From assembly GCA_051530055.1 (NCBI GenBank), contig JBMGUZ010000053.1:1-19643 (forward strand): a stretch of 19,643 nt of DNA. Direction: 5' to 3'. Made by a program: the position numbers and the translations under genes. Shown piece after piece: positions 3,193-19,643 of the stretch. The notes beneath the pieces are model-generated. The model ran no database searches and was not told the DNA's origin. It saw only the letters and a program-made list of their open reading frames with translations. The stretch is from Neoechinorhynchus agilis. Taxonomy: Eukaryota > Animalia > Acanthocephala. The stretch's first letter is position 1, and each line of letters begins with the position of its first letter.

Positions 3193-3325
3193 CTTAAATG
3201 AATGAACAACTAACAGTGTCCAAAGCTTGGGAGATATCAAACTGAAGGATGAGTTTATCGATTCCTAAATGGAGCAAAATGAGAGCCCGAACTCACAGGA
3301 AGGCTCTAAACCGTGAAAGTTAGAT
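3193..3325 (+). repeat. Dispersed repeat; inverted near-identical copy at 19513-19643; possible LTR-retrotransposon gag remnant
   Basis: The reverse complement of the window end matches this stretch apart from a 2-nt indel (gagagcccgaa vs gagagcgaa). The translation EQLTVSKAWEI only weakly recalls the Gypsy gag 'LTLxKAxEI' motif. Confidence 0.8.
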
Positions 3326-3723
3326 GCCAGAAATTTTATGGTTGTTTGCCTTTGCCGAATAAATTTTTTTTATTTGAATTTTTGGTTTAATATTACACCG
3401 AAGTGCGCGGAAAAACGCGAAACTCAAATCCGCTCTCTGTGATCAATGAACAAAAGATGTTTCGAAAATAGCAATTTTTTATCCAATTCTCGTCCGAAAA
3501 ATCCACGAGGGAACATATCTTCAAAGCATTTTAATTTTATCAAGCGATCGAGAGCATTGAATAAAATGCAGGGCCGGTGGATCTCAGTTCCGATTTGTAA
3601 CTTTTAAAGGCAGCAATAGCAGAACACACGAGACGCAGAATTATGATCAACAAATCTATTGAAAAATATCTGTCTATCACTAATAACTAATTCTACGAAG
3701 TATAATCTTAATTCGAATTGCCC

Positions 3724-4964
3724 TCGGATTCGTCGTCTTTTTGCTGATTTTCTCCAGGCTTCGATATGCCTTCGTTCTCTTCTGATGAATCGAAATCATT
3801 AAAATCACCTTGATTTGACGAGCTTTCGTCCATCATTGGAGGTCGACTGCTCATCCCATCGGATTCGTCGTCTTTTTGTTGATTTTCTCCAGGCTTCGAT
3901 ATGCCTTCGTTCTCTTCTGATGAATCGATATCATTAAAATCACCTTGATTTGACGAGCTTTCGTACATCGTTGGAGGTCGACTGCTCATCTCATCGGATT
4001 CGTCGTCATTTTGCTGTTTGTCTCCTGGCTTCGATATGCCTTCGTTCTCTTCTGATGAATCGAAATCATTAAAATCACCTTGATTTGACGAGCTTTCGTC
4101 CATCATTGGAGGTCGACTGCTCATCTCATCGGATTCGTCGTCATTTTGCTGATTTTCTCCAGGCTTCGATATGCCTTCGTTCTCTTCTGATGAATCGAAA
4201 TCATTAAAATCACCTTGATTTGACGAGCTTTCGTCCATCGTTGGAGGTCCGCTGCTCATCTCATCGGATTCGTCATTTTGCAGAATTTCTCCAGGCTTCG
4301 ATATGCCTTCGTTCTCTTCGGATGAATCGAAATCATTAAAATCACCTTGATTTGATGAGCTTTCGTCCATCACTGGAGGTCGACTGCTCATCTCATCGGA
4401 TTCGTCGTCATTTTGCAGATTTTCTCCTGGCTTCGATATGCCTTCGTTCTCTTCTGATGAATCGAAATCATTAAAATCACCTTGATTTGATGAGCTTTCG
4501 TACATCGTTGGAGGTCCGCTGCTCATCTCATCGGATTCGTCGTCTTTTTGTTGATTTTCTCCAGGCTTCGATATGCCTTCGTTCTCTTCTGATGAATCGA
4601 TATCATTAAAATCACCTTGATTTGACGAGCTTTCGCCTATCATTGGAGGTCGACTGCTCATCTCATCGGATTCGTCATTTTGCAGTATTTCTCCGGGCTT
4701 CGATATGCCTTCGTTCTCTTCGGATGAATCGAAATCATTAAAATCACCTTGATTTGACGAGCTTTCGTCCATCACTGGAGGTCGACTGCTCATCTCATCG
4801 GATTCGTCGTCATTTTGCTGATTTTCTCCAGGCTTCGATATGCCTTCGTTCTCTTCTGATGAATCGAAATCATTAAAATCACCTTGATTTGACGAGCTTT
4901 CGTCCATCATTGGAGGTCCACTGCTCATCTCATCGGATTCGTCGTCTTTTTGCTGATTTTCTCC
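3724..4964 (-). repeat. Coding tandem repeat, 135-bp (45-aa) unit, 9 full units plus a partial one
   Basis: Unit GENQQKDDESDEMSSGPPMMDESSSNQGDFNDFDSSEENEGISKP. The only indels are 3 bp (units 3 and 6 are 132 bp), so the frame is kept throughout. Confidence 0.97.
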
Positions 4965-5032
4965 ATCTCTGGATTTAAATAGTATTGGCGAATCGCTATA
5001 ATAGGAGAACGGCGTAATTTTGTTTTTCGTTT

Positions 5033-5252
5033 TAAGATTAATCATTATTGTTTCAATATCACCTAGCGATATTCACTCAGAAAATTGATTTATATTGAAA
5101 ATTTTCGGCCTTTTCGTTGGCCTTCTTCAGTCAGATCTAGAATGTTTGTAAGTTTTTAACATTCTAGATCTGACTGAAGAAGGCCAACGAAAAGGCCGAA
5201 AATTTTCAATATAAATCAATTTTCTGAGTGAATATCGCTAGGTGAAATTGAA
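5033..5252. mobile_element. Palindromic Penelope-derived insertion with 19-bp target-site duplication
   Basis: Inverted arms of 95 bp (5052-5146 / 5158-5252, 1 mismatch, 11-nt loop). Flanked by the direct repeat gtaattttgtttttcgttt at 5014-5032 and 5253-5271. The arm matches the Penelope 3' end at 9288-9326. Confidence 0.85.
5171..5208 (+). ncRNA. Minimal type I hammerhead-ribozyme-like core (mirror copy on the minus strand at 5096-5133)
   Basis: tga-CUGAAGA-a-GGCC-aacgaaaa-GGCC-GAAA-auuu-uca: both conserved core boxes, a 4-bp stem II, a short palindromic stem III and a short stem I. Penelope-like elements are known to carry such minimal hammerheads. Confidence 0.6.
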
Positions 5253-6568
5253 GTAATTTTGTTTTTCGTTTCCGGTCGGACGGAAAGCGCTGATATGTTG
5301 ACTAGTAGTCCTATCGCGATAATCAGTACGATAATGGGAATCCTCATTTTCCTATTTCTTTATTCGATATTCAAGTCGATCTTATAGAATTCGAGGAGAT
5401 CGCAAACCGCTTTTAGGTGAGTGCTCGCCTTTGTTTCCGGTATTTATTCAACATTGACTAGACGCTTGTCGTTCATTTTGTTTATCAATAATGTGTTTCC
5501 CAATATAGAGAACGATTTAGTATCTTTGGTAATTTCACCTTTATTAGCGCTTTGTTTACTTATTTTCCGCCCGCAGTCTTGCGTTCATTGAAGTGATCGA
5601 AGATACTGTAATTAATCTAAACTTCCATTTTGTGCTGTCTAAATTTTTTGTCGTTTGAAATAGTGAAGTTCGCTAGAACAACAAATCTTTTAAAACAAAA
5701 CCCGAAAATAAAATCAACATTTTAACCTATGTCATTTTTTTCAATACTTAGTTTCAGAATAATAATCGGATACAAGAACAGAGAATAAATATGGAGCACA
5801 CGCTGGTGAAAATTCAAAGGGAATTGAATTTCTTTAAATGTCTAAAAAAATTGTTTATCCTAAGCATTTTTTAAAGAAACAATCTCTAAAGAAATGTTAC
5901 TGCTGGGAAATGCTTAGATCAATATTGTATTTTTGAATCGTCCATGTTTATTCTTTTTTAAATGCGCTCTTTTAATCTTTATAAACTCGCAGAAATTGAA
6001 TGCAAATTCCGCGTTACTATGGTAATCAAAGGCAATGAAAAATTCCACAATTGCAAATCATTGAATTCGTTCTACCAAATTTGGGTGCGTTTGTTCTTCA
6101 ATCTTGTAAACTTTGAATTATCTGACTATTCAGCTCTACACAAAATTCATAAACGAGAGCAATAATGATTTATCCAATTGTATCGCTGGAAAGATGTGCC
6201 AACTCGACTTTTTCAATTGGCGGAACGTTGCAACTTCGGATTAGCTGCGCCGGAGAAATTTACAAACGCTAGTAAACAAGGACAATAAAATGGACAATTC
6301 GAAGATCGAAAAAGCGGATGCTGCTGGTGAGGTTAGGAACAATTGCAGCTGCGGCCCTTGAAGAGTGCCTTGTCCTCAACTTCATGTTGTTCAGGGATTG
6401 ATCGAAACGGGCGAATCTGGCCGTTAATTCACTTGGCAGGTGGGGTGTGGAACAACTCTCCGTCCGATTCAATTGCTAAAGACGAGGACGTTCCGACATA
6501 GATTTTTCGTTCCAACCCGAGCTTTCAGAGTTGAGTGGAAGAGCAAAAGTGAGCATTATAAGGATGGA

Positions 6569-6985
6569 CATTGTTTCCATCATTTGTTGACATTTGCAAA
6601 TTTGATGATCTTTCACGTTTATGACTTTTAAAGAATTGAACAAATACGATTAGAGAAAGTAATAACGCTAGCTAGCCATATACAATTTTGTTCGTTTAGT
6701 AATTCCTGACGCGCTAATTCAAAATCTGTTTTCGGATTTGCGATAGCTGCAATAGTTCTTGAGTTATTTGTTTTTCAGTTTTTGGAGAAACAACCGTGAT
6801 TATTGATGCATTGTTTCCATCATTTGTTGACGTTTGCAAATTTGATGATCTTTCACGTTTATGACTTTTAAAGAATTGAACAAATACGATTAGAGAAAGT
6901 AATAACGCTAGCTAGCCATATACAATTTTGTTCGTTTAGTAATTCCTGATGCGCTAATTCAAAATTTGCTTTCGGATTTGCGATA
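6569..6985 (+). repeat. Direct duplication of ~177 bp (6569-6745 and 6809-6985, offset 240) just upstream of the Penelope ORF
   Basis: cattgtttccatcatttgttgac...ttcggatttgcgata occurs twice with a few substitutions. Confidence 0.92.
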
Positions 6986-6996
6986 AACTGCGTCTA

Positions 6997-9345
6997 ATGG
7001 AGAAATTATCGTTGAAAATGGTTCGCAACAAAAATGCATCGGAATTCCTTGAAAGCTGTAAACGGTATGAAGTACTTCCTTCATTTCTGGAACTACAATC
7101 GGTGGCGTATGGGTTCGAGGGCTCAAAAGCCCAGAAGTCGATGCAAACTTGGTTATTGAACAACGCTATTAAGGAACTCCAAAAAGAAAGGAAACATCTT
7201 GAGCGTCAATTAGAGAACAATCGTGGTATTCTGGGTTGCTTGACGGACGACGAATGGTGTAATATCCTGATTGTGGAGGTCGATAACTTGGCAGAAATTC
7301 TCAAACTCGCCGATGGACATCTATTCATTCCGTCGGAGAACAAAGATAAGGTCATCAACCTATCGAAGATTATACTGCCTGAAGAAGTATTGGAACTTTT
7401 GTCATTCGGCCCTGAGTTTATCCCGACCCCGAGAATCGGAACCCTACAATTCAGAACTAAGATGGAGGAAATGGTGTATGACCTTTCGATTCAAATCGAA
7501 AATATCCCATTATGGGAGTTTGAAAGAAGTTGCAAAATGGCTATTAAGAACGGAAGGAATCGTGGTTCGAATATAACAGGAAAGATGTTGACTGGACTCA
7601 AAGTAATCAAGGCACGGAATGAATTACGTAAACTGAAAATCTATAAATTACATGGATTTTGTGTGGCAAACGAAGAAATGTTCAACAGACTTGGTATGGA
7701 ACTTCTACAGGCTGACGAATTCAAGAAGCTCGATTTCTGCCCCACGAATAAACGCGAGAACGAACTCAACAGATTACTTCTGAAATTAATGAAACAGAAG
7801 GGTCTACCAGAAGAAGAGTTTAAAAGAATACGATCCGTGAATGCTAAGACGCCGAAAATGTATTTATTTGCAAAGATCCACAAAACACCCGTCAAAGCGC
7901 GTCCGATCATCGCCGCACACTCATCCTATAACTATAAGTTGTCGAGAAAACTATCCGGATTTATCAAACAGCTCCTTCCGGCATCGGACCATGTGGTCAC
8001 TTCGGGTGTAGATTTCATTGATCGATTGGGCAGGGTGAATCCAAACGAAACCGGTCTCATGGTTTCGGCGGATGTAACGTCCTTATTTACAAAGATACCC
8101 GTGGAGGAGGGGATTGAGCTAGCAACAAACCTATTGGTCGAAAAATGTACAGAATGGAAGCTCTCAGCTAATAATTGGCGCCAGCTTCTTGAATTCTGTA
8201 GACAATATTCAAACATTGAGTTTGAGGGTGTGAATTATGACCAGGCGGATGGGCTAGCGATGTGGGAAACCCATTATACCCACTATTGGCTGAGATATAC
8301 ATCAGAAAATGGGATGAACACTTGTCAGAATTAAATGATGTGAAGCTCTGGCTACGATATGTGGACAATACGTTAATTATTCTGGATCCCAATAGAAGTT
8401 CAACTGTACAACTGAGCAAGGAACTGAATAGCTGCCACCAAAATATAATATGGGCAATGGAAGAGGAGGAAAATGAGTCTCTACCATTGCTGGGGGTTCG
8501 AATAGTGGTTTTATGACATCGGTCTACAGGAAGCAAGGGTTTCCGCACATGGTTGTTCCGTGGATATCTGCTCAGCCGATCAAACACAAATTGGCAATAG
8601 TCCGATCGATGTTCATCAGGGCATTTCGATATTGTTCGGATACAGTACGCCTTAATTGTGAACTATATTGGATTTATTAAACAATCTCAAAGTGAGTGGA
8701 TACCCAAAGAAATACATTGAGAAATGTAGGAGAAGGGCTCAGTATGCTTCGTATGTGAGAACAATCAATCAAGAGAAAAAGAAGTGCTACATTGAAACGC
8801 CATTAGTCGATGTTCAATGGAATTCGGGGATAGATTCGCTGATCAACAGAATCGATAGAGACAAAGCGTGCGCTACGTTTAAGCAAAAGGGCAGGACTCT
8901 CCAAGGAGTACTCCGGCCGAAAAATGAGGAGGTACCGGTCGGATGTGTATACAAGATTTCATGTTCCAATTACAATCTCTCATATGTGGGACAAACCATC
9001 AATTTAAAAAGGATTGCCGAGCACAGAAGAGCAGTGGACAAAAAGACGGATGTAAGTTCGCCAATAGTGTCCCACATCAATAGCAGTGGACATGCGATCA
9101 ATTTTGATGGCACCGAAGTACTGGCCCGCACTGACGTAAAGCGCGATAGAGTGACGATCGAAGCGATAATGATCCAGCGAACAAACACGTTTCCTGGCAA
9201 CAAAGCCGACTATAAATTGAACCTCAGAATACCCCTCGATAAATAGAATTAAGACGCTCTCAAATTTGATTCTACTGTAATTTTAGAGTGACCGAAGAAG
9301 GCCAACGAAAACGCCGAAAATTTTCATATAATAAATTTAATTGAT
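6997..9345 (+). mobile_element. Decayed Penelope-like retroelement (RT plus GIY-YIG endonuclease)
   Basis: PLE N-terminal motif EKLSLK..FLESCK..VLPSFL. RT motifs YLFAKIHK, RPII, SADVTSLFTKIP, GLAM/GNP, RYVDN (catalytic YVDD altered) and TSVYRK. GIY-YIG VYKISC..YVGQT..RIAEH..EAIMI. Frameshifts near 8261, 8505 and 8667. Hammerhead-like 3' end. Confidence 0.93.
9288..9326 (+). ncRNA. Degenerate hammerhead core in the Penelope 3' terminal region
   Basis: gtga-CCGAAGA-a-GGC-caacgaaaac-GCC-GAAA-attttca. It differs from the 5171 copy by 2 nt, including CUGA to CCGA. Confidence 0.5.
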
Positions 9346-9737: not shown

Positions 9738-10906
9738 TGTGGCTACGACTACTTTCGGATGCCTGACGTGCAACAGAAGGAAGTTTGTGTTTATGAATAG
9801 TAATGATGTACATGACTTAGACAATTCAATGTTTCGCGCTTAAAAATTCTGTTCTTTGTGTGGCAACGACAACTTTGGGATTCCTGACGTGCAACAGAAG
9901 GAAGTTTGTGTTTATGAATAGCAATGAGGTACATGACATAGACGATTCAATGATTGGCGCTTAAAAATTCTGTTATTTGTGTGGCAACGACCATATTGGG
10001 ATTCCTGACGTGCAACAGAAGGAAGTTTGTGTTTATGAATAGCAATGAGGAACATGATATAGACAATTCAATGATTGGCGCTTAAAAATTCTGTTATTTG
10101 TGTGGCAACGACTTCTTTGGGATTCCTGACGTACAACAGAAGGAAGTTTGTGTTTATGAATAGCAATGAGGTACATGACTTAGACAATTCAATGATTGGT
10201 GCTTAAAAATTCTGCTATTTGTGTGGCAACGACTTCTTTGGGATGCCTGACGTACAACAGAAGGAAGTTTGTGTTTATGAATAGCAATGAGGTACATGAC
10301 TTAGACGATTCAATGATTGGTGCTTAAAAATTCTGTTATTTGTGTGGCTACGACTTCTTTCGGATTCCTGACGTGCAACAGAAGGAAGTTTGTGTTTATG
10401 AATAGCAATGAGGTGCATGATTTAGACGATTCAATGATTGGTGCTAAAAAATTCTGTTATTTGTGTGGCAACGACCACCTTGGGATTCCTGACGTGCAAC
10501 AGAAGGAAGTTTGTGTTTATGAATAGCAATGAGGAAAATGATATAGACAATTCAATGATTGGCGCTTAAAAATTCTGTTATTTCTGTGGCAACGACTACT
10601 TTGGGGTTCCTGACGATCAACAGAAGGAAGTTTGTGTTTATGAATAGCAATGAGGAACATGATATAGACAATTCAATGATTGGTACTTAAAAATTCTGTT
10701 ATTTGTGTGGCAACGACCACCTTGGGATTCCTGACGTGCAACAGAAGGAAGTTTGTGTTTATGAATAGCAATGAGGAAAATGATATAGACAATTCAATGA
10801 TTGGCGCTTAAAAATTCTGTTATTTCTGTGGCAACGACTTCTTTGGGATGCCTGAAGTACAACAGAAGGAAGTTTCTGTTTATGAATAGCAATGAGGTAC
10901 ATGACT
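9738..10906. repeat. 121-bp satellite/tandem array, left block (~9.7 units)
   Basis: The marker 'gaagttt' recurs at 9780, 9901, 10022 ... 10869, an exact 121-bp period. Units differ by scattered substitutions. Confidence 0.97.
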
Positions 10907-13900
10907 AGTCCAATTGATCTCGGCACTGCTTTCCTGGCCTATATAAGTAGAGCTAAAGCCACTCTTGGCGATATGGAGCATGTTCGAGTGGAAAAGAAGG
11001 AAAGACGCGAAAAGTACCGCAATTTCAGTACTTTTGTTCCTACCGACAAAAATGGATCATTCACCCGCGACATGGAGGCTGCCATGCGAAACTTCAAGTA
11101 TGAAGCTGCTTTCGTTGGGCCCACAACCATAGCGGAAAAATCTGATAGTATAGACCATAAGATTCGTAACGATGTTCGAGTGCGTGCTCATTATCTTCTT
11201 AATAAGATTGGCACCTCGAAGAAACGACTTATGGGTCTTTGTTTCTCCCATAGAAATAATCCACCTATGTTGCACGCCTTGGCACATGGGCTTAACTCCC
11301 GTAATCAGCGTTTGTGCGCTGCGTTCTGTAAGGAGTTGGACACGTTGAATGGCCAGGGCGAGTTAATAGAAAATCTCGAATGGCGCGCCACTAGGCGCAC
11401 TACACTTCTCTCTTCGCTTAGAAATAGGCACTTTCGGCAGTTCAGTACTTCGGGATGGCTCTCGCCAGATGCTATCTCCACTCTAGCTGGAAACGGTGTG
11501 AGCAGTTTCACAAGCTCTTACATCTCCTCCGTTCTAGCTGGTGGTGATGGCTATGCCGAGAGGCTCTCTGAAGAATGGAACCGCCTTATGCATTCCATTA
11601 ACGGCAATCCAGTCTCGCGACCCTATGTGCCGGTAGGGTATCAGATGACCGTTAAGTCTTTACAATCAGCTGACCACGTTTTTAAGATCGTTACTGCCTT
11701 GGCTGGGAATTACTCCCTTTTCCGAACTCTTCCAAACACTACGCTCGGTTTCCTCCACGAAGTGGGTCTCACAGCCAAAGATAATGACATCTTTCTTGGC
11801 GAAAAAGCTAGAGCAGCGGCCCAGATCAATTGTCCTTTCTATAGGGGGGAGAGTGTTGAAGAGAAGAAGGCTTTACACTATTACTTCGGTGTTATGCCCC
11901 ATATGGTTGAAAGCTATGGGCCGATTTGTCTTTCTCTAGGCCTTTCTTATTCTACTTCCGGTTTAATCGGTGCTGAGTACAATGAGTTGTGGCGCGAGAC
12001 TGAAGGTGAAGCGGTTGTAGTCCAACCCTCAGAGAGTGTGAGCTTCGGTCGCTCGGCTTTACCCGAGGAGACTTTAACTCCGCAAGATCAACTCTCTATC
12101 ATTACTCGTGTCTTTGGGGCCTCCCCGGCCGATCTTATACGTAGCACCAATCCAACGCGAGTCCGGGCCAAGTTTCGCGTAACTGTTGAAAAAATCTTGG
12201 CTCAGAAAAGAATCGAATTCAAGGAACTCCTCTCCCAAAATCAGAAGCAAGTTGAGTCCACTCGAGAATCTCTAGCCAAGCGTCCCCGCGATTCTGTGTT
12301 GCTCAAAATTCTTGAAGAATCTAGACAAGCCCAGCTTAGAATTGATTCTAGTCTGGCTTTGATAGAGCGGATTGGGGAGGAATTTCAAGCGCTATCTCAT
12401 CTCGACGACCTGCCGATCATGACGGCTTATAATGATGATCTAGATCTAGAATCTTTGCCGAATAGTCCGGTCGACATCGGTACTGCCTTCTTAGCCTACA
12501 TGAGTAGAGCAAAAGCCACTATCGGCGAGACTGAGCACGTCCGAGTAGAGAAGCGGGAGAAGCGCGATAGGTATCGTAATTACAATTCATTCGTCCCTAC
12601 AGATAAGAACGGTTCTTTCACCCGTGACATGGAGGCTGCCGTACGAAACCTCAAGTATGAGGCTGCGTTCGTCGGGGCTACAACCATCGCGGAAAAGTCG
12701 GACAATATCGAACATAAGATTCGTAATGATGTGCGAGTTCGCGCGCATTACCTTCTTAATAAAATCGGAACATCAAAGAAGAGATTAATGGGTCTCTGCT
12801 TTGCTCATAGGAACAATCAGCCCATGTTACATGCTCTAGCGCATGGGCTGGCCTCCCGTAACCAGCGCTTGTGCGCAGCCTTTTGTAGGGAGTTAGATGT
12901 TCTAAATGGGCAAAGCGAATTGTTGGAAAGTCTGGAATGGCGCGCCACTAGGCGCACAGCTTTGCTTGCATCGCTTAGAAATAGGCACTTCAGGCAATTC
13001 AGTTCTTCGGGGTGGCTTTCACCTGATGCCATCTCCACTTTAGCCGGAAACGGGGTGAGCAGTTTCACTAGCTCCTATATCTCCTCCGTCCTGGCTGGTG
13101 GCGATGGTTATGCTGAAAGACTTTCCGAGGAATGGAATCGCCTCATGCACTCTCTCAAAGGCAATTCGATTCCGCGACCCTATGTGCCGGTAGGATATCA
13201 AATGACAGTTGAATTCGTTCAGTCGGCCGACCATGTCTCCAAAATAGTTACCGCTCTGGCTGGTAATTATTCCTTGTTTCGGACCATCCCCGCCACCAAC
13301 TTTAGCATCATTGCTACCAAAGAGCCCGAATTTCTCCATGACGCAGGCCTGATCCTCGAGCAGGACGATAGCTTTCTTAACGATAAAGCCAGGGCAGTTG
13401 CTGAGGCTAGCGTACCCTTCTACAGAGGCAAGAGCGTCGAGGAAAAGAGAGCTCTACATTACTATCTCTGCAACATGCCCCATCTGACTGAAACTCACGG
13501 ACCGATTTGTATCTCTTTGGGCTTATCTTATGCTATGTCTGGTCCAATTGGTGCCGAATATAACGAACTATGGCGTGAGCAAGAGCTCATGTTGAAACCC
13601 GGCATGGACCTAGACCCTAATGTGTTCCACATTCTCTCACCCGATCCGGTTGACCCTCCGACCACTATTTCGAGCAGCTCTTGTCTCGATAGAGTGTATA
13701 GCTTAATTCTATCAGATGATTTGGATACATCCGCACGGATGGATTTCACTCGGCTTTTACATACCGTTAGTCAGGTTGCCCCACTGCTCCGTCGTCGGAA
13801 CGAAAAAATGGCTTACCTGACGCTTTGCGGTTCTGCTGCGCTCGATCATTATCGAGACGGCTCCCCAGCCACGTTCGCTCGAATGCGAGCAATTCTTTCT

Positions 13901-15523
13901 ACTGACAATTATCCGACAGTTACGGCTCCGCCGCCAAACGGTAATTCTCGCTTGGATGGTAATATTCGCCGTATGTGGGTATGTCAACCGTTTGAGATCG
14001 TCTGGCTGCGCATGTCCGTCGTTGACTTCTTCAGATGCGTAGCCGTTAACAATTTAGTCTGGAACGAAGGACCAAATGTCCACAACTCGGCACTTGACGG
14101 TCGTACCCTCGCCGTCATGGAACAATATTTCCCGGCTCCCGCGGAGCAGTTGCATCGTATAGTCGCTACTGTGTGGAATCCGATTCTTGTTGATGAGATC
14201 TATATGAATCGTTCTGGCACCGAGGAGCATTTCTTTTCTCTGATGGATGCGTTCGCTAAACAAGCCAATAAGATTTTTATTGTGGTAACCGTCACGTTAG
14301 AAGAGATTGCGACTTGTGTCCAGCGATTCCGCTATACTAGTTCCAACGGAATGGGTTCTTTCCCTTACGACAATCTCGGCCTCTCGATCCTCAACGGTTC
14401 GTTTCCGAATGAGGCTTTAAATGAAATTCCATGTCAAGAGGAATTATTATCTTACTTAGCCTTATCCAACAATACTCTTGACTACCAATTTATGGGTAGG
14501 CTAAAGGTTCCGTACAATTCTGGTATTAGACTAGCCTGGAATTACGACCCGGGCTTCTACTTTTACCCTCTTATTCAGTTTGGCCTTCTTAAGGTCTCAG
14601 ATCTTCCGGCTACTCGAACAAGGTTGACTCCTGAAAACGAGTTGAAGTATTATTCTGCACCTGACATCTTGCCGTGCCTTAGGCTTGCTGCACACAAGTT
14701 AAGTCTGCGGCTTGACACGATGCAAGTTTCGATCAAAGCAGTGACGCCTGAATCTTCTTGGATTTTAGGGTCGATTTCCGATGTGCTACCAACGAGCGAT
14801 AGGACTATTTTGGGTATCATTAACGCATATTTGGGCGTTCCGCTAGCTAGAGCTTTTGCTGCATGGGCGGTTGATCCGGAAGTCACTATCGTTCATGAAC
14901 GAACAATTCTACACTGGGTCATGGTCTCCAAGTCACTTGGAGTATCGTTCGGTTCCGGGGCCATGGCGTATTCCGAACATAATGGTAGGTCTTCTGTTGG
15001 AGTGTCGTGGCAACTGTCTTCTCATACTCAGGAGGCTGAGCTGACGACTAAATTCTTCTTAAACAATTCGGTATGGTCTGTCGTTTGTACCGACGACCTT
15101 GATCCTTTCAGAATCGGACTTAATGAACCTTGCACGCCCGAACTAATGCCTCTCGTCACATTGAAAGGTTTCATCGGCGGAATCCGTTCTGATATCACTT
15201 TCAGAGGGGCGCTCCTTCCTAGAGGATGCAAAGGTCAGTACGACGTGATTACTATAGGTTCTCTCTTCGCGATCCAAGTTAAAATTAACGCTCATATCCG
15301 TCTCCGCTTCTCTCTGGCGCATCTAGCGAGTTGGGACACTCGCTTTGACAAGGGCACCTTCGATGTCCCCAGGAACGAAAGGTATACCGATCCTCTCGGT
15401 ATTGCCTCGTGTTTCGAGGGGGACTCGCAGTTAGCACCCATGGGCCCCGAGGCCCGAATTTCTTCCAAAGGGTCGAAGATAGAGGATGCTTCAGAGCGTG
15501 CGGCTGCCTCTGCGGAGGATTAG
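10892..15523 (+). CDS. Viral ORF1: putative capsid/structural polyprotein with an internally duplicated ~365-aa domain; 5'-truncated, start codon from the satellite
   Basis: 1543 aa without a stop, upstream of the RdRp as in totivirus genomes. Repeat copies at 10907-11998 and 12464-13579. The capsid assignment rests on position only; no motif was recognised. Confidence 0.7.
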   Translation: MRYMTSPIDLGTAFLAYISRAKATLGDMEHVRVEKKERREKYRNFSTFVPTDKNGSFTRDMEAAMRNFKYEAAFVGPTTIAEKSDSIDHKIRNDVRVRAHYLLNKIGTSKKRLMGLCFSHRNNPPMLHALAHGLNSRNQRLCAAFCKELDTLNGQGELIENLEWRATRRTTLLSSLRNRHFRQFSTSGWLSPDAISTLAGNGVSSFTSSYISSVLAGGDGYAERLSEEWNRLMHSINGNPVSRPYVPVGYQMTVKSLQSADHVFKIVTALAGNYSLFRTLPNTTLGFLHEVGLTAKDNDIFLGEKARAAAQINCPFYRGESVEEKKALHYYFGVMPHMVESYGPICLSLGLSYSTSGLIGAEYNELWRETEGEAVVVQPSESVSFGRSALPEETLTPQDQLSIITRVFGASPADLIRSTNPTRVRAKFRVTVEKILAQKRIEFKELLSQNQKQVESTRESLAKRPRDSVLLKILEESRQAQLRIDSSLALIERIGEEFQALSHLDDLPIMTAYNDDLDLESLPNSPVDIGTAFLAYMSRAKATIGETEHVRVEKREKRDRYRNYNSFVPTDKNGSFTRDMEAAVRNLKYEAAFVGATTIAEKSDNIEHKIRNDVRVRAHYLLNKIGTSKKRLMGLCFAHRNNQPMLHALAHGLASRNQRLCAAFCRELDVLNGQSELLESLEWRATRRTALLASLRNRHFRQFSSSGWLSPDAISTLAGNGVSSFTSSYISSVLAGGDGYAERLSEEWNRLMHSLKGNSIPRPYVPVGYQMTVEFVQSADHVSKIVTALAGNYSLFRTIPATNFSIIATKEPEFLHDAGLILEQDDSFLNDKARAVAEASVPFYRGKSVEEKRALHYYLCNMPHLTETHGPICISLGLSYAMSGPIGAEYNELWREQELMLKPGMDLDPNVFHILSPDPVDPPTTISSSSCLDRVYSLILSDDLDTSARMDFTRLLHTVSQVAPLLRRRNEKMAYLTLCGSAALDHYRDGSPATFARMRAILSTDNYPTVTAPPPNGNSRLDGNIRRMWVCQPFEIVWLRMSVVDFFRCVAVNNLVWNEGPNVHNSALDGRTLAVMEQYFPAPAEQLHRIVATVWNPILVDEIYMNRSGTEEHFFSLMDAFAKQANKIFIVVTVTLEEIATCVQRFRYTSSNGMGSFPYDNLGLSILNGSFPNEALNEIPCQEELLSYLALSNNTLDYQFMGRLKVPYNSGIRLAWNYDPGFYFYPLIQFGLLKVSDLPATRTRLTPENELKYYSAPDILPCLRLAAHKLSLRLDTMQVSIKAVTPESSWILGSISDVLPTSDRTILGIINAYLGVPLARAFAAWAVDPEVTIVHERTILHWVMVSKSLGVSFGSGAMAYSEHNGRSSVGVSWQLSSHTQEAELTTKFFLNNSVWSVVCTDDLDPFRIGLNEPCTPELMPLVTLKGFIGGIRSDITFRGALLPRGCKGQYDVITIGSLFAIQVKINAHIRLRFSLAHLASWDTRFDKGTFDVPRNERYTDPLGIASCFEGDSQLAPMGPEARISSKGSKIEDASERAAASAED

Positions 15524-15559
15524 CCACCGAACGATTTAGTTCGGAATGTGAATCTGAGC

Positions 15560-16365
15560 TGATGCATCTGGTACACCTTCAGCTCTGAATAACCTGTGCT
15601 GGCATGTGGAATGCCCGGTCTGCAACATGATTTCGATTAGACATGAGAGACAAGATATTGTCATCGAGTTGGGTAGAGATTACTCTGAATCTAAAGTCGA
15701 AATCGATAGTTGGATGCACATCATTGCTGGAAATCGGCCAAATCCGCCCATTTTAAGGTTGCTCCTCAATATACGCTCCTTACTGCATTTGACATTTTCA
15801 GAATGGCCCGCCCGACACTTAAAGTCGCCAATGAGTTCGTCCCATCAACTTTCGAGCTCTACAACTTGTTACATGGTTTGCATACTGCTGTCGTTGGAAA
15901 TACGAAAATTCAACATTATTTCAAAGGAACTTGGTAACCAACTCGCAGGTAAGCTTAGTCATTACTATAACCCGCGCCCTGTGAGAGTGTTTGCCAAAGC
16001 TCGACAGAAGAGACTTGCTAAACGGTGGGACTTCGTCCCGATCTACTCTGGTGATATTCCACGGAATATACTTTCGAAAATTGAAAATTATCTAAAAGTA
16101 TGGAACTTGTCAGCAACTATTAGGCAGTTGTATTCTTTTCTTCTTCCATACTATCAATCCAACCAGTTCGAATACTCCGACGTCTGGTTACTTGATGCAT
16201 CTGGTACACCTTCAGCTCTGAATAACCTGTGCTGGCATGTGGAATGCCCGGTCTGCAACATGATTTCGATTAGACATGAGAGACAAGATATTGTCATCGA
16301 GTTGGGTAGAGATTACTCTGAATCTAAAGTCGAAATCGATAGTTGGATGCACATCATTGCTGGAA
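15560..16365 (+). repeat. Perfect 173-bp non-tandem duplication (15560-15732 = 16193-16365)
   Basis: tgatgcatctggtacacc...catcattgctggaa is identical at both sites, offset 633 nt. Visible in the protein as ECPVCNMISIRHERQDIVIELGRDYSESKVEIDSWMHIIAG twice. Confidence 0.97.
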
Positions 16366-18548
16366 GGAAGTTATCTACACGCGAATTCTTTTCGCTACTT
16401 CGCCCGCTTGCAACAGAGACCGAAACAGAGGGGATGCTAAGGGCAGCATGGGTTGAGAGGGAGGCTGATTGTTCAATCCGCTACATTCCCCCTACCTCTG
16501 CTATGTCTGAAAAGGTTGGATCTCTTTTTCCTGGGTCCCCTGCTTGGCAGCGCTCGTGCGCTTTGGTGAGCCGATTAGGACTCGATTTCTTATTGCAGCA
16601 TATCTATCAGTCTTTGACTTTGGTTCCCACCTTCGAGGGTTCGTTGTTGTGGATGCGCCGAGTTTCTGCCCTTGCCAAGGCTAATATAACTTCCACCCGT
16701 TACGCCACCATGCTGGTCGACCTGAATAGATGGCTTGGCCATTTTCCGCTTCTTAGCGAAAAAGAGATGATTGACTCAGCGCGAGGATGGTTGGGGTGTA
16801 CGAATTCATGCTTAGGTACGGGCGGTGCACTGATCTGGGAAAGGCTTAATCTCTTGCATGCGTCGGAACTTATCTCAAAGATCTTCTCATCCATTCCAAG
16901 GACAACCGGAGCTGATATATGGCGCGAGATGCTCATTAGTCGCACTTGGTCTACGCCCGGAGCATCGAACGCTGGAGATTTCTCAGCTAGGAAGAATCAG
17001 CTAGGTTTTAAGCTCCCGAAGACCAAAGCTTCCCTAGCGCTTTGGGCTTCGGACGACCAAATCTACAATATGATATCCACTCCATCCAGGGAGGTGATGA
17101 ATGTGGCCCCGAAATATGACGAACTGGGTAAGGCGCGACATATCCTACGTTCAGATGACGCTACCTATCTTAAGCAGGTGTTAGTTGAAAAATGTCTCGG
17201 AACTCCTTCCCCTGCCGTGTTAGATGGTATTCGGGTTGTCTCGCCCATCTTCTCTACGCCCCACGAGTGGCTTCAACAATTACGCGAATTCGGGGAGGCG
17301 GCTGCCAAACCGTGGTACTTCTCGATCCAATTGGACCACTCGAAATTTGACGAGCATCAGTCTGGTCCTCTAATCAGATGTATCATGTTGGAGCTGTTAC
17401 ATCATGCCTCTAAACGTCATTCTTGGATTTTGAGTCCTCTTAGGACTTCTTTGCTTACTTCCTTCCTTATGCCGGCGGATGTAAAGTTAGCGGCTGGCGG
17501 CTTCATCTGCTCCCATTTGGGGGGACTTCCTTCCGGGTGGAAGTGGACGGCTTTACTTGACACCATTCTCAACTATTCGTTGAATAGAGCAGCGATGGAA
17601 GTCGTCGGTCTTCTGCCGGAACCGAATATCATGGCTCATATGGGGGACGATTCTCTATGGTTTGTCAAAGAGGACGAGTTGAGAATGGCAGTGCACGTCC
17701 CATCCTTCTTAAACTGGAAAGGTTATGTTCTCAATGCGTCGAAAAATTATATCTCTAACATGTCGTGTGACTTCCTCGGCTATACGGCAGTGAGCGCCAC
17801 TGACATACGGGGTGCCGCTTCGCGAATGGTACCTACTGTAGTGGTCTCACATTCTCGGCTGGGCTATGAAATTCCACCCATCTTACGTTCCTTTTCGGCA
17901 CTGTGGAATTGGGTGATGCTGGTCAAAAGGCTAGAGGGCGTGGTCCCGAAGTCCACTCTATTGCCCCTTATTGCAAAGGATGTTTCCGGTATATCTAAGA
18001 ATTCTTATCTTCAAGTTCTCACTTATCTAAATACTCCTGCTTCTCTCGGCGGCGCCGGTTTAACCGGAATAGCATCGTATCTTGATTATGATGGCACGAA
18101 TAAAGCGGTTACTCTACTTAAGCGCCCACCAGAACGAGAAGAAGTTGTCGTTACTAAAACAACGCCTCTGTCTCTCTGCCTCCCTCGTGACTGCAGAGCT
18201 ACGTTCGATTGGGCGGTCAATTCTTATTGCAAGCGCACCCTTCCGAGTTATATTGGCAATGAGCTGTATTTTCAGAAGGTCGAGCGAATCGTTATAAAAC
18301 GGAACAAATTTTTGTCGATAACCTGTTTGATCCCCGCTCGTTGGGAGTTTTCGCTTCCGAGGGTTATCGAATCCACTTACAAGGAATTAGTTACCCGGTC
18401 CAGATCTGAATTTCGTCTCTTCCTGGCACGTCATCCTACTGCCCTTTCGGTTAGGACGAAGTTTCTATTCTCTCTCTTTTCTCGTAGAGGCCATTCTTGG
18501 GCCATTATTCGCTCGTGGTTGCTTGGGCGTTTTGCCCACTGTTCGTAA
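15606..18548 (+). CDS. RdRp: Toti-like RNA-dependent RNA polymerase (probably begins near 15349 in the reconstructed virus)
   Basis: Motifs in order: WSTPGAS; F (PKYDELGKARHIL); A (LDHSKFDEHQ, ~17334); B (GLPSGWKWTALLDTILN, ~17523); C (MGDDS, GDD at 17643-17651); D (GYVLNASKN); E (CDFLG). Confidence 0.95.
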   Translation: MECPVCNMISIRHERQDIVIELGRDYSESKVEIDSWMHIIAGNRPNPPILRLLLNIRSLLHLTFSEWPARHLKSPMSSSHQLSSSTTCYMVCILLSLEIRKFNIISKELGNQLAGKLSHYYNPRPVRVFAKARQKRLAKRWDFVPIYSGDIPRNILSKIENYLKVWNLSATIRQLYSFLLPYYQSNQFEYSDVWLLDASGTPSALNNLCWHVECPVCNMISIRHERQDIVIELGRDYSESKVEIDSWMHIIAGRKLSTREFFSLLRPLATETETEGMLRAAWVEREADCSIRYIPPTSAMSEKVGSLFPGSPAWQRSCALVSRLGLDFLLQHIYQSLTLVPTFEGSLLWMRRVSALAKANITSTRYATMLVDLNRWLGHFPLLSEKEMIDSARGWLGCTNSCLGTGGALIWERLNLLHASELISKIFSSIPRTTGADIWREMLISRTWSTPGASNAGDFSARKNQLGFKLPKTKASLALWASDDQIYNMISTPSREVMNVAPKYDELGKARHILRSDDATYLKQVLVEKCLGTPSPAVLDGIRVVSPIFSTPHEWLQQLREFGEAAAKPWYFSIQLDHSKFDEHQSGPLIRCIMLELLHHASKRHSWILSPLRTSLLTSFLMPADVKLAAGGFICSHLGGLPSGWKWTALLDTILNYSLNRAAMEVVGLLPEPNIMAHMGDDSLWFVKEDELRMAVHVPSFLNWKGYVLNASKNYISNMSCDFLGYTAVSATDIRGAASRMVPTVVVSHSRLGYEIPPILRSFSALWNWVMLVKRLEGVVPKSTLLPLIAKDVSGISKNSYLQVLTYLNTPASLGGAGLTGIASYLDYDGTNKAVTLLKRPPEREEVVVTKTTPLSLCLPRDCRATFDWAVNSYCKRTLPSYIGNELYFQKVERIVIKRNKFLSITCLIPARWEFSLPRVIESTYKELVTRSRSEFRLFLARHPTALSVRTKFLFSLFSRRGHSWAIIRSWLLGRFAHCS

Positions 18549-18783
18549 ATTTCTTTTTCAAGGTGACGAACTAGATCTTATTAATCCATACGTATCCAAT
18601 GTTGATTTAGCATTTTCTTTCTTTTACGAATACAAATTGACTGTACCTAAACTTACTTTAATACTTGAATCTCAACCTTTACGCAAATTTCGACGTTACG
18701 ATGTCAATGATATTATGAATTTGGGCGGTACTCAAGGCCTATTTACGGAATCCGACTCCCTTTCCATGTTCTGCGATAAGTAG
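18523..18783 (+). pseudogene. Probable frameshifted C-terminal continuation of the RdRp (or a small ORF3)
   Basis: The +1 frame is open from 18391 to 18783, overlapping the RdRp end. Removing one base in tgg ttg [c] ttg ggc gtt gives ...SWLLGVLPTVRKFLFQG... Confidence 0.45.
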
Positions 18784-18865
18784 ATCGATGGGCGGGACTT
18801 CCGGATGTTTGGTGAGCAATTCGGCTCACTTACGTATATGTTAACCAGTCTGTTGGTGTGCGGGC

Positions 18866-19091
18866 TAAAAATTCTGTTATTTCTGTGGCAACGACTTCTT
18901 TGGGATGCCTGAAGTACAACAGAAGGAAGTTTCTGTTTATGAATAGCAATGAGGTACATGACTTAGACAATTCAATGATTGGTGCTTAAAAATTCTGCTA
19001 TTTGTGTGGCAACGACTTCTTTGGGATGCCTGAAGTACAACAGAAGGAAGTTTCTGTTTATGAATAGCAATGAGGTACATGACATAGACGA
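18866..19091. repeat. 121-bp satellite, right block (~1.9 units)
   Basis: Same unit and orientation as the left block. 18866-18963 is identical to 10809-10906. Confidence 0.96.
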
Positions 19092-19512: not shown

Positions 19513-19643
19513 ATCTAACTTTCACGGTTTAGAGCCTTCCTGTGAGTTCGCTCTCATTTTGCTCCATTTAGGAATCGATAAACTCATCCTTCAGTTTGAT
19601 ATCTCCCAAGCTTTGGACACTGTTAGTTGTTCATTCATTTAAG
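19513..19643 (-). repeat. Inverted copy of the dispersed repeat at 3193-3325 (runs off the window)
   Basis: Direct sequence match on the reverse strand. Confidence 0.85.

What the first reader, a model, noticed from the sequence alone, without database searches (positions are those of the whole stretch)
10907..13579. Viral ORF1 carries a ~365-aa domain twice, diverged mainly at silent sites
Seen: copy A 10907-11998 (364 aa) and copy B 12464-13579 (372 aa, 8-aa indel), separated by a ~155-aa linker with a coiled-coil-like stretch. 14 of the first 60 aa differ, mostly conservatively. In the core LRNRHFRQ...WNRLMHS only 1 of 60 differs, yet a 14-codon stretch of it shows 7 synonymous changes. 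Both copies therefore evolved under protein-level purifying selection, before integration. I know of no such tandem domain in totivirus polyproteins. Alternatives: (a) a genuine viral gene duplication; (b) an in-frame template switch between two related co-infecting viruses during cDNA synthesis.
Basis: partly seen in the sequence, partly recalled or inferred. Interest (0 to 1): 0.78.

Follow-up and report, generated by a model that had tools for sequence, protein, structure and literature searches.

The report
Two-lineage chimeric toti-like viral insert
The repeated 366-residue stretch is real, but it is two related toti-like virus lineages joined head to tail inside one virus-derived insert in the genome of the thorny-headed worm Neoechinorhynchus agilis, not a domain duplicated by a virus.

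Summary
Copy A (10907-12004) and copy B (12464-13585) align over 366 columns with 80% identical residues and one 8-residue gap. Nucleotide identity is 74%, synonymous sites are saturated (pS 0.79) and dN is 0.12. Both copies therefore diverged under strong protein-level selection, before integration.

The duplication reading fails.
- All five other elements of this family read in full in N. agilis have the order N-terminal region, linker, one copy, C-terminal region.
- The closest relative of the linker-plus-copy-B part (88% residue identity) is one of them.
- Copy B groups with three single-copy elements to the exclusion of copy A in 436 of 500 bootstraps. A and B were never sisters.
- Copy A begins exactly where a 121-nt host satellite ends. 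The ATG and first five codons of ORF1 are satellite sequence.
- Copy A ends at a sharp switch into the middle of a second lineage's ORF1.

The whole 7,960-nt block (10906-18865) fills one gap in the satellite array. The two pieces were therefore most likely joined before or during integration. The join mechanism is not resolved: viral RNA recombination, template switch during cDNA synthesis, or end joining.

This is a new member of a known kind: a chimeric non-retroviral endogenous viral element.

The parts
9738..10905 (.). Upstream host satellite, 121-nt unit, 9.7 copies. Weaker copies reach back to about 9617. The array ends 79 nt into a unit.
   Evidence: The last partial unit (10827-10905) is 100% identical to both downstream units and 87-97.5% identical to the other upstream units.
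10906..18865 (+). The whole virus-derived block (7,960 nt). It fills one gap in the satellite array, and 24 nt of one satellite unit are missing at the site.
   Evidence: array bounds and phase; RdRp; relatives of ORF1 only in N. agilis plus one run assembly.
10892..15523 (+). ORF1 as it stands, 1543 codons with no stop or frameshift. It is a composite: five satellite-derived codons including the ATG, the lineage-A fragment, then a 5'-truncated lineage-B ORF1. The canonical N-terminal region of about 500 residues is absent.
10907..12004 (+). Copy A, a 366-residue fragment of the ORF1 of a separate virus lineage. Its 5' end is cut by the satellite junction and its 3' end by the switch to lineage B. 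The last two codons are ambiguous between the lineages.
   Evidence: Nucleotide identity is 74.6% to the L008 element and 73.7% to copy B.
12005..12463 (+). The 'linker', 153 residues. It is the ordinary stretch of lineage-B ORF1 that precedes the copy in every canonical relative.
   Evidence: 135 of 153 residues identical to P0020, which has 507 residues of N-terminal region upstream of this point.
12464..13585 (+). Copy B, 374 residues, in its ordinary place in lineage-B ORF1.
13586..15523 (+). C-terminal 645 residues of ORF1 plus the stop codon. This is the only part with a relative outside N. agilis (P0019, 30% identity).
15606..18548 (+). ORF2, 980 codons and open. It holds the RNA-dependent RNA polymerase with its GDD motif. 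Near its 5' end it has one duplication-insertion relative to the P0001 element.
18549..18865 (+). Non-coding tail of the block between the ORF2 stop and the satellite. It has no poly(A) run.
18866..19089 (.). Downstream host satellite, same 121-nt unit, 1.9 copies.

Best explanation
The window is nuclear DNA of the acanthocephalan Neoechinorhynchus agilis. It carries a young endogenous viral element, with both reading frames open, derived from a toti-like double-stranded RNA virus. The element's ORF1 is a chimera of two lineages of one virus family.

The 5' piece (copy A) is an internal 366-residue fragment of the ORF1 of lineage A. It is joined in frame to an ORF1 of lineage B that starts about 150 residues upstream of its own homologous stretch (copy B). 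From there lineage B runs on through the C-terminal region and the polymerase gene.

The 'repeat' is therefore the same part of ORF1 seen twice, once from each parent. The silent-site divergence between the copies is the divergence of two exogenous viruses.

Inferred: the two pieces were joined before or during integration and entered one break in a 121-nt satellite array as a single block. The likeliest route is a switch from the lineage-B template to a lineage-A template while a strand was copied towards the 5' end, by the viral polymerase or by a host reverse transcriptase. End joining of two cDNA fragments at the break is the other route.

The start codon is supplied by the satellite by chance. 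After integration the locus was duplicated and has evolved neutrally.
For: **Shown**
1. Host and integration. All close protein hits are N. agilis proteins of assembly GCA_051530055.1. The block is flanked on both sides by the same 121-nt satellite.
2. Virus type. Pfam gives RdRP_1 at 32.5 bits and RdRP_4 at 25.5 bits, both above their cut-offs. The nearest named polymerases are those of the tapeworm toti-like viruses, at 29-31% identity.
3. Single copy elsewhere. tblastn maps of L002/L003, L004, L005, L006 and L008 all give N-terminal region, linker, one copy, C-terminal region. The window has no match to the N-terminal region.
4. The closest relative of the B part is canonical. The L008 element (P0020 plus P0006) is 88% identical in residues in both the linker and the copy. 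It is 82.5% identical in nucleotides from window 11997 onwards. P0020 has 507 residues of N-terminal region upstream of the point where the window has copy A.
5. Phylogeny. Residue identity is 80% for A-B, 86% for B-P0001 and 88% for B-P0006. Neighbour-joining groups (B, P0001, P0006) without A in 436 of 500 bootstraps, and (A, B) in 0 of 500. Where A and B differ, P0001 and P0006 both share the B state 17 times and the A state 3 times. A is not a fast-evolving copy: it keeps the outgroup state in 8 columns, B in 5.
6. Selection. A-B has pS 0.785 and dN 0.117. A-P0001 has 0.750 and 0.143. B-P0001 has 0.714 and 0.096.
7. Junctions. The satellite runs to 10905, and the ATG at 10892 is satellite sequence. 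Homology to the copy and homology to the L008 linker meet at 11997-12004.
8. One gap in the array. The last upstream partial unit is 100% identical to both downstream units, and only 24 nt of a unit are missing.
9. The paralogous locus L001 has the same upstream flank. Its satellite joins directly inside copy B, and it is 99.8% identical over 3,368 nt. It can only be a deletion derivative, so the A-linker-B order is the older state.
10. After integration: 6 differences in 3,368 nt, of which those inside ORF1 are 1 silent and 5 replacing.
Against: - No second, independent sequence shows the A/linker junction. The only paralogue lacks that part, and read-level support could not be checked.
- No A-lineage element with the canonical order was found, so lineage A is known from this fragment alone.
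- No hallmark of a particular mechanism is present: no poly(A), no target-site duplication, and microhomology of at most two ambiguous codons.
- The neighbourhood is heavily rearranged (inverted repeats, a deletion derivative, a duplication-insertion in ORF2). A DNA-level join after integration therefore cannot be excluded.
- The tree rests on 223 complete columns and neighbour joining only.
Confidence: 0.75

Rival explanations
1. DNA-level join after integration. A lineage-A element and a lineage-B element integrated separately in the same satellite region. They were later fused by non-homologous or microhomology-mediated recombination, or by deletion of what lay between them.
For: The genome holds many elements of several lineages. 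The region is rearranged. The window end is the reverse complement of 3193-3325. The 58,976-nt contig JBMGUZ010000012.1 carries inverted copies of the P0001 element at its two ends. The paralogue has lost its 5' and 3' parts. ORF2 has a duplication-insertion.
Against: The block fills one gap of the array, with flanking units that are 100% identical and nearly in phase. Two independent insertions would not be expected to show this. Both pieces are free of stops and frameshifts, which fits a single young event. The join is in frame, though that happens one time in three by chance.
Confidence: 0.13
2. Genuine duplication in the virus. A toti-like virus duplicated about 1.56 kb of ORF1, and both copies were kept by selection for a long time before integration.
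For: The join is in frame, both copies are intact, and dN/dS is very low between them.
Against: A and B are never sisters, and B is closer to three single-copy elements. The closest B-lineage relative has the canonical N-terminal region where the window has copy A. The duplication would therefore have to be younger than a 12% residue split, while A and B differ by 20% in a more conserved stretch. Copy A's start is a host junction, not a viral boundary.
Confidence: 0.04
3. Assembly artefact. The A/linker junction is a false join of reads from two different elements.
For: The surroundings are repeat-rich. No second assembly of the junction was found, and the ORF1 product is not on record elsewhere.
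Against: A and B are only 74% identical in nucleotides, and the junction does not lie in sequence shared by the two. An assembler therefore has no repeat to cross there. The frame is kept, and both flanks of the block match one satellite unit.
Confidence: 0.05
4. Host co-option. The composite ORF1 is an expressed host gene kept open by selection.
For: Two long open frames (1543 and 980 codons), and an ATG supplied by the flank.
Against: The near-identical paralogue differs by 1 silent and 5 replacing changes and has lost large parts. The divergence of 0.18% is low enough that open frames are expected without selection. The genome's annotation calls no gene with this product. The genome's transcriptome paper mentions no viral genes.
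Confidence: 0.03

Closest known systems
Non-retroviral endogenous viral elements derived from toti-like viruses (for example the planthopper ToEVEs, PMC10636211, and the mosquito viral integrations, PMC5497376)
   Same: A polymerase and an upstream ORF of dsRNA-virus origin are integrated in an invertebrate genome. There are many copies of differing age. They sit in repeat-rich DNA next to retroelement remnants, and rearranged or composite copies occur.
   Different: The host phylum (Acanthocephala) has no such report in the papers searched. This copy spans nearly both genes with both frames open. It joins two virus lineages in frame, so that one part of ORF1 occurs twice.
Schistocephalus solidus toti-like viruses 1 and 3 (PMC7305300)
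   Same: They have the nearest named polymerases (29-31% identity over 98-99% of the query, Pfam RdRP_4). They have two ORFs and genomes of about 8 kb, and their host is a parasitic worm of fish.
   Different: Those viruses are exogenous and are reported to be absent from their host's genome. No sequence match between their ORF1 and this ORF1 came back in any search. Their ORF1 was not read here.
Recombinant or defective viral genomes with partial duplications made by polymerase template switching
   Same: The join runs from a downstream point in one template to an upstream point in another, keeps the frame, and repeats a segment.
   Different: Here the two templates were different lineages, and the product is known only as host DNA. 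Whether it ever existed as viral RNA is unknown.

Membership tests
Endogenous element of a toti-like dsRNA virus | RNA-dependent RNA polymerase of the totivirus/luteovirus type | tested here: met
   Pfam RdRP_4 scores 25.5 bits (cut-off 22) and RdRP_1 32.5 bits (cut-off 23.9). A GDD motif is present. The best named hits are toti-like virus polymerases carrying PF02123.
Endogenous element of a toti-like dsRNA virus | An upstream ORF that encodes a totivirus-type capsid protein | tested here: inconclusive
   ORF1 lies upstream of the polymerase gene. It has no Pfam match and no match to solved structures. Both structure predictions were unusable, with mean pLDDT 28.5 and 36.2, so no fold comparison was run.
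Endogenous element of a toti-like dsRNA virus | Integrated in host chromosomal DNA | tested here: met
   Host satellite lies on both sides. The same flank occurs at a paralogous locus of an N. agilis contig. Related, partly degraded copies lie on chromosome-scale scaffolds CM121341.1 and CM121343.1.
Tandem domain duplication within one gene | The two copies are each other's closest relatives | tested here: not met
   (A, B) is recovered in 0 of 500 bootstraps. B groups with single-copy P0001 and P0006 in 436 of 500.
Tandem domain duplication within one gene | Close relatives of the gene share the two-copy order, or the copy limits match domain limits | tested here: not met
   All five other elements have one copy. 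Copy A's limits are a host junction and a lineage switch.
Chimeric cDNA made by retrotransposon reverse transcriptase (template switch, target-primed insertion) | Segments from different templates joined at a sharp point | tested here: met
   The lineage switch lies within nt 11997-12004.
Chimeric cDNA made by retrotransposon reverse transcriptase (template switch, target-primed insertion) | Poly(A) tail, target-site duplication, or retroelement sequence fused to the viral part | tested here: not met
   There is no poly(A) at 18549-18865. At the target, 24 nt are lost rather than duplicated. A possible Penelope-like remnant lies 1.6 kb upstream, beyond the satellite, and is not fused to the block.
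Co-opted (domesticated) viral gene | Purifying selection after integration | tested here: inconclusive
   Only 6 differences separate the two genomic copies. Within ORF1 they are 1 silent and 5 replacing, which looks neutral, but the number is too small to decide.

The most novel reading that the evidence does not exclude
The A-linker-B order existed in a replicating virus: a recombinant of two co-infecting toti-like lineages that carried about 1.56 kb of ORF1 twice. The integrated copy would then be a 5'-truncated snapshot of it. What lay upstream of copy A in the parent molecule is unknown, because the satellite junction cuts it off.
Probability: 0.1. Interest if true: 0.55.

Novelty: new member of a known kind. 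Interest (0 to 1): 0.33.

Why it matters
The finding removes a tempting false lead, a capsid-region domain supposedly duplicated and kept by a totivirus. What remains still has value.
- It is a large family of toti-like endogenous elements from several lineages in an acanthocephalan.
- That phylum has no such report in the papers searched.
- ORF1 of the family has no detectable relative among about 15 billion public proteins, apart from one short run assembly.
- The young copy, with both frames open, records that at least two lineages of this virus family were present in the same germ line at about the same time.
- It gives a dated reference sequence for looking for the living virus in N. agilis transcriptomes.

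Tried and rejected
- **Structure route.** AlphaFold2 was run on copy B plus the C-terminal region (5-row alignment) and on copy B alone (8-row alignment). Mean pLDDT was 28.5 and 36.2. Fold search was therefore not run, because the matches would be meaningless.
- **Sequence route to a known fold.** Pfam, PDB by phmmer and PDB by profile gave nothing above noise.
- **Exogenous relatives of ORF1.**
  - The word-indexed search found only N. agilis proteins.
  - The exhaustive search of 1.84 billion representatives gave 18 hits; the 13 whose source was checked were 12 from N. agilis and one 2,124-nt run assembly. That contig covers only the C-terminal region, so it says nothing about copy number.
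  - IMG/VR gave nothing.
- **Independent copy of the junction.** Exact look-up of the ORF1 product found no record.
- **Misplaced N-terminal region.** I looked for the canonical N-terminal region elsewhere in the window and found none.
- **Unequal crossing-over between A and B as the origin of the paralogue.** Rejected. The paralogue lacks more than one repeat period (1,557 nt) and starts inside the satellite.
- **ORF1's ATG as a viral start.** Rejected, because it is satellite sequence.

Full report
**1. The observation**

The window has two long open frames on the + strand: 10892-15523 (1543 codons) and 15606-18548 (980 codons). The first one contains the same stretch twice.
- Copy A is residues 6-371 (nt 10907-12004). 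Copy B is residues 525-898 (nt 12464-13585).
- They share 366 aligned columns, 294 identical, with one 8-residue gap (BLASTP 606 bits).
- Nucleotide identity is 73.7%. Differences at codon positions 1, 2 and 3 are 16%, 8.7% and 54%.
- pS is 0.785, which is saturated. dN is 0.117.

The repeat is real, and both copies diverged under strong selection on the protein.

**2. Where the window comes from and what the block is**

- All close protein relatives are annotated proteins of Neoechinorhynchus agilis, assembly GCA_051530055.1.
- ORF2 matches Pfam RdRP_1 and RdRP_4 above their cut-offs and has a GDD motif.
- Its nearest named relatives are the polymerases of Schistocephalus solidus toti-like viruses 3 and 1 (31% and 29% identity) and Triaenono virus 1. 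The first two are two-ORF viruses of about 8 kb from a tapeworm (PMC7305300).
- ORF1 has no Pfam or PDB match.
- An exhaustive search of 1.84 billion representative proteins gave 18 hits. The 13 whose source was checked are 12 N. agilis proteins and one 2,124-nt run assembly covering only the C-terminal region.

**3. The flanks**

- A 121-nt satellite runs from 9738 to 10905 and resumes at 18866-19089.
- The last upstream partial unit (79 nt) is 100% identical to both downstream units, but only 87-97.5% identical to the other upstream units.
- Only 24 nt of one unit are missing at the site.
- The 7,960-nt block 10906-18865 therefore fills one gap in the array.
- The ATG of ORF1 (10892) and its first five codons are satellite sequence. 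In intact units the same frame stops a few codons later. ORF1 thus has no viral start, and copy A begins exactly at the host junction.
- There is no poly(A) run at the 3' end of the block and no target-site duplication.

**4. Relatives have one copy**

I mapped the pieces of ORF1 by tblastn onto every related locus fetched. The pieces were the N-terminal region of P0004, the linker, copy A, copy B and the C-terminal region.

| Locus | Element | Order found |
|---|---|---|
| L002 / L003 | P0001 | N-terminal region, linker, one copy, C-terminal region |
| L004 | P0003 | same |
| L005 | P0004 | same, as far as the copy extends |
| L006 | P0005 | same, as far as the copy extends |
| L008 | P0020 plus P0006 | same, as far as the copy extends |

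The window has no match to the N-terminal region.

The L008 element is the closest relative of the window's linker and copy B.
- It is 88% identical in residues in each, and 82.5% identical in nucleotides from window 11997 onwards.
- P0020 has 507 residues of N-terminal region just upstream of the point where the window has copy A.

**5. A and B are not sisters**

| Pair | Residue identity |
|---|---|
| A-B | 80% |
| B-P0001 | 86% |
| B-P0006 | 88% |
| A-P0001 | 76% |
| A-P0026 | 77% |

- In neighbour-joining trees on 223 complete columns, (B, P0001, P0006) excludes A in 436 of 500 bootstraps. (A, B) never appears (a smaller set gave 211 of 300 and 0 of 300).
- Where A and B differ, both P0001 and P0006 have the B state 17 times and the A state 3 times.
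- A keeps the outgroup state about as often as B does (8 against 5), so A is not a degenerating extra copy.
- At silent sites all three pairs among A, B and P0001 are near saturation.

A is thus a lineage of its own that split off before B, P0001 and P0006 separated. All of those lineages have the single-copy order.

**6. The internal junction**

- Homology of copy A to the copy of other elements ends at the same point where homology to the L008 linker begins, within nt 11997-12004. Two codons there are ambiguous between the lineages.
- In copy B and in every relative, the residues after this point continue into the C-terminal region.
- In the window they instead jump back to a point about 150 residues upstream of the copy in lineage B.
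- The limits of the '365-residue domain' are therefore two breakpoints, not fold boundaries.

**7. History after integration**

- Locus L001, on a 58,976-nt contig, has the same upstream flank and satellite. There the satellite joins directly inside copy B.
- From that point on, L001 is 99.8% identical to the window over 3,368 nt. It then departs from the window inside the ORF2 region.
- The upstream flank of L001 runs uninterrupted to a point inside the window's last satellite unit. L001 can therefore only be a deletion derivative of a window-like state. The A-linker-B order is the older one.
- The two copies differ at 6 positions. Within ORF1 these are 1 silent and 5 replacing changes, as expected without selection.
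- At 0.18% divergence, open frames need no special explanation.

*State of the genes, by count*

| Locus | State |
|---|---|
| Window, ORF1 | No stops or frameshifts. The N-terminal region is absent and one foreign fragment is joined on. |
| Window, ORF2 | No stops. One duplication-insertion near its 5' end, relative to the P0001 element. |
| L001 copy | One 5' deletion and one 3' truncation. |
| L004 element, polymerase gene | Split over three frames with about 20 stops. Its ORF1 pieces are open. |

**8. Mechanism**

*Shown:* two lineages, one sharp in-frame join, one gap in the array, and a young age.

*Inferred:* the join was made before or during integration. A strand copied from the 3' end of a lineage-B RNA towards its 5' end could switch to a lineage-A RNA further downstream in ORF1 and stop early. 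That would give exactly this order, with a 5' truncation. The enzyme could have been the viral polymerase in a co-infected cell or a host reverse transcriptase. End joining of two cDNA fragments at one break gives the same picture. The 24-nt loss at the target and the lack of poly(A) fit break repair better than target-primed insertion. A later DNA-level fusion of two separate inserts is less likely, because the flanking units are identical, but it is not excluded.

**9. Comparison and novelty**

Toti-like endogenous elements, including rearranged ones, are well known in arthropods (PMC10636211, PMC5497376). None was found reported for Acanthocephala, and the N. agilis genome and transcriptome paper does not mention viruses. 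The element is a new member of a known kind.

**10. What led nowhere**

- Both structure predictions were unusable, with mean pLDDT 28.5 and 36.2, so no fold search was made.
- IMG/VR held no relative.
- The exact ORF1 product is on record nowhere else.

Noticed in passing
window 6997-9246 (+): A 445-residue ORF has motifs that I recall as reverse-transcriptase motifs of Penelope-like elements, though Pfam finds no RT. It is followed by a 192-residue ORF with a weak GIY-YIG hit (E 8.6e-4, below the cut-off). This may be a retroelement remnant just upstream of the satellite. The same arrangement occurs in L001 and L003.
   Followed up: partly
window 3598-5106 (-): A 445-residue ORF with an SH3BGR domain (E 3.5e-14) is built on about nine tandem 135-nt (45-residue) repeats. 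Copies of it lie in L001 and L002.
   Followed up: partly
window 19513-19643 and 3193-3325: The last 131 nt of the window are the reverse complement of 3193-3325 (94 nt at 100%, 43 nt at 95%). An inverted duplication therefore brackets the whole region. In L001 the matching flank has the other orientation.
   Followed up: no
window 5040-5264: A near-perfect hairpin with 107-nt arms, 94% complementary, 11 nt apart.
   Followed up: no
window 6569-6985: A direct repeat of 177 nt at 98% identity, 240 nt start to start.
   Followed up: no
window 15606-18548 (ORF2): One exact 173-nt direct repeat lies within the 5' part of the polymerase gene region. It belongs to a duplication-insertion that the P0001 element lacks and that the near-identical paralogue L001 shares. 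The frame stays open through it. The origin of the non-duplicated part of the insert is unknown.
   Followed up: partly
L002 1-13918 and L003 (contig JBMGUZ010000012.1, both ends): The 58,976-nt contig carries the P0001 element at both ends in inverted orientation. The sequence after the element differs between the two arms.
   Followed up: no
L001 15669-17921: An mRNA-capping-enzyme gene whose called range equals its coding length (750 residues; DSPc, mRNA_cap_enzyme and mRNA_cap_C) lies about 2.5 kb from the truncated element copy.
   Followed up: no
L008 8246-10606 (P0006): The gene model P0006 runs from the element's ORF1 into unrelated sequence that contains a GDD-like motif and has no Pfam hit. 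It may be a second, different virus-derived piece.
   Followed up: no
L007 1-2124 (Logan SRR26222420): This is the only relative of ORF1 found outside N. agilis. It is a short contig with two ORFs that overlap by four bases, the first 30% identical to part of the C-terminal region. It may come from an exogenous relative.
   Followed up: partly
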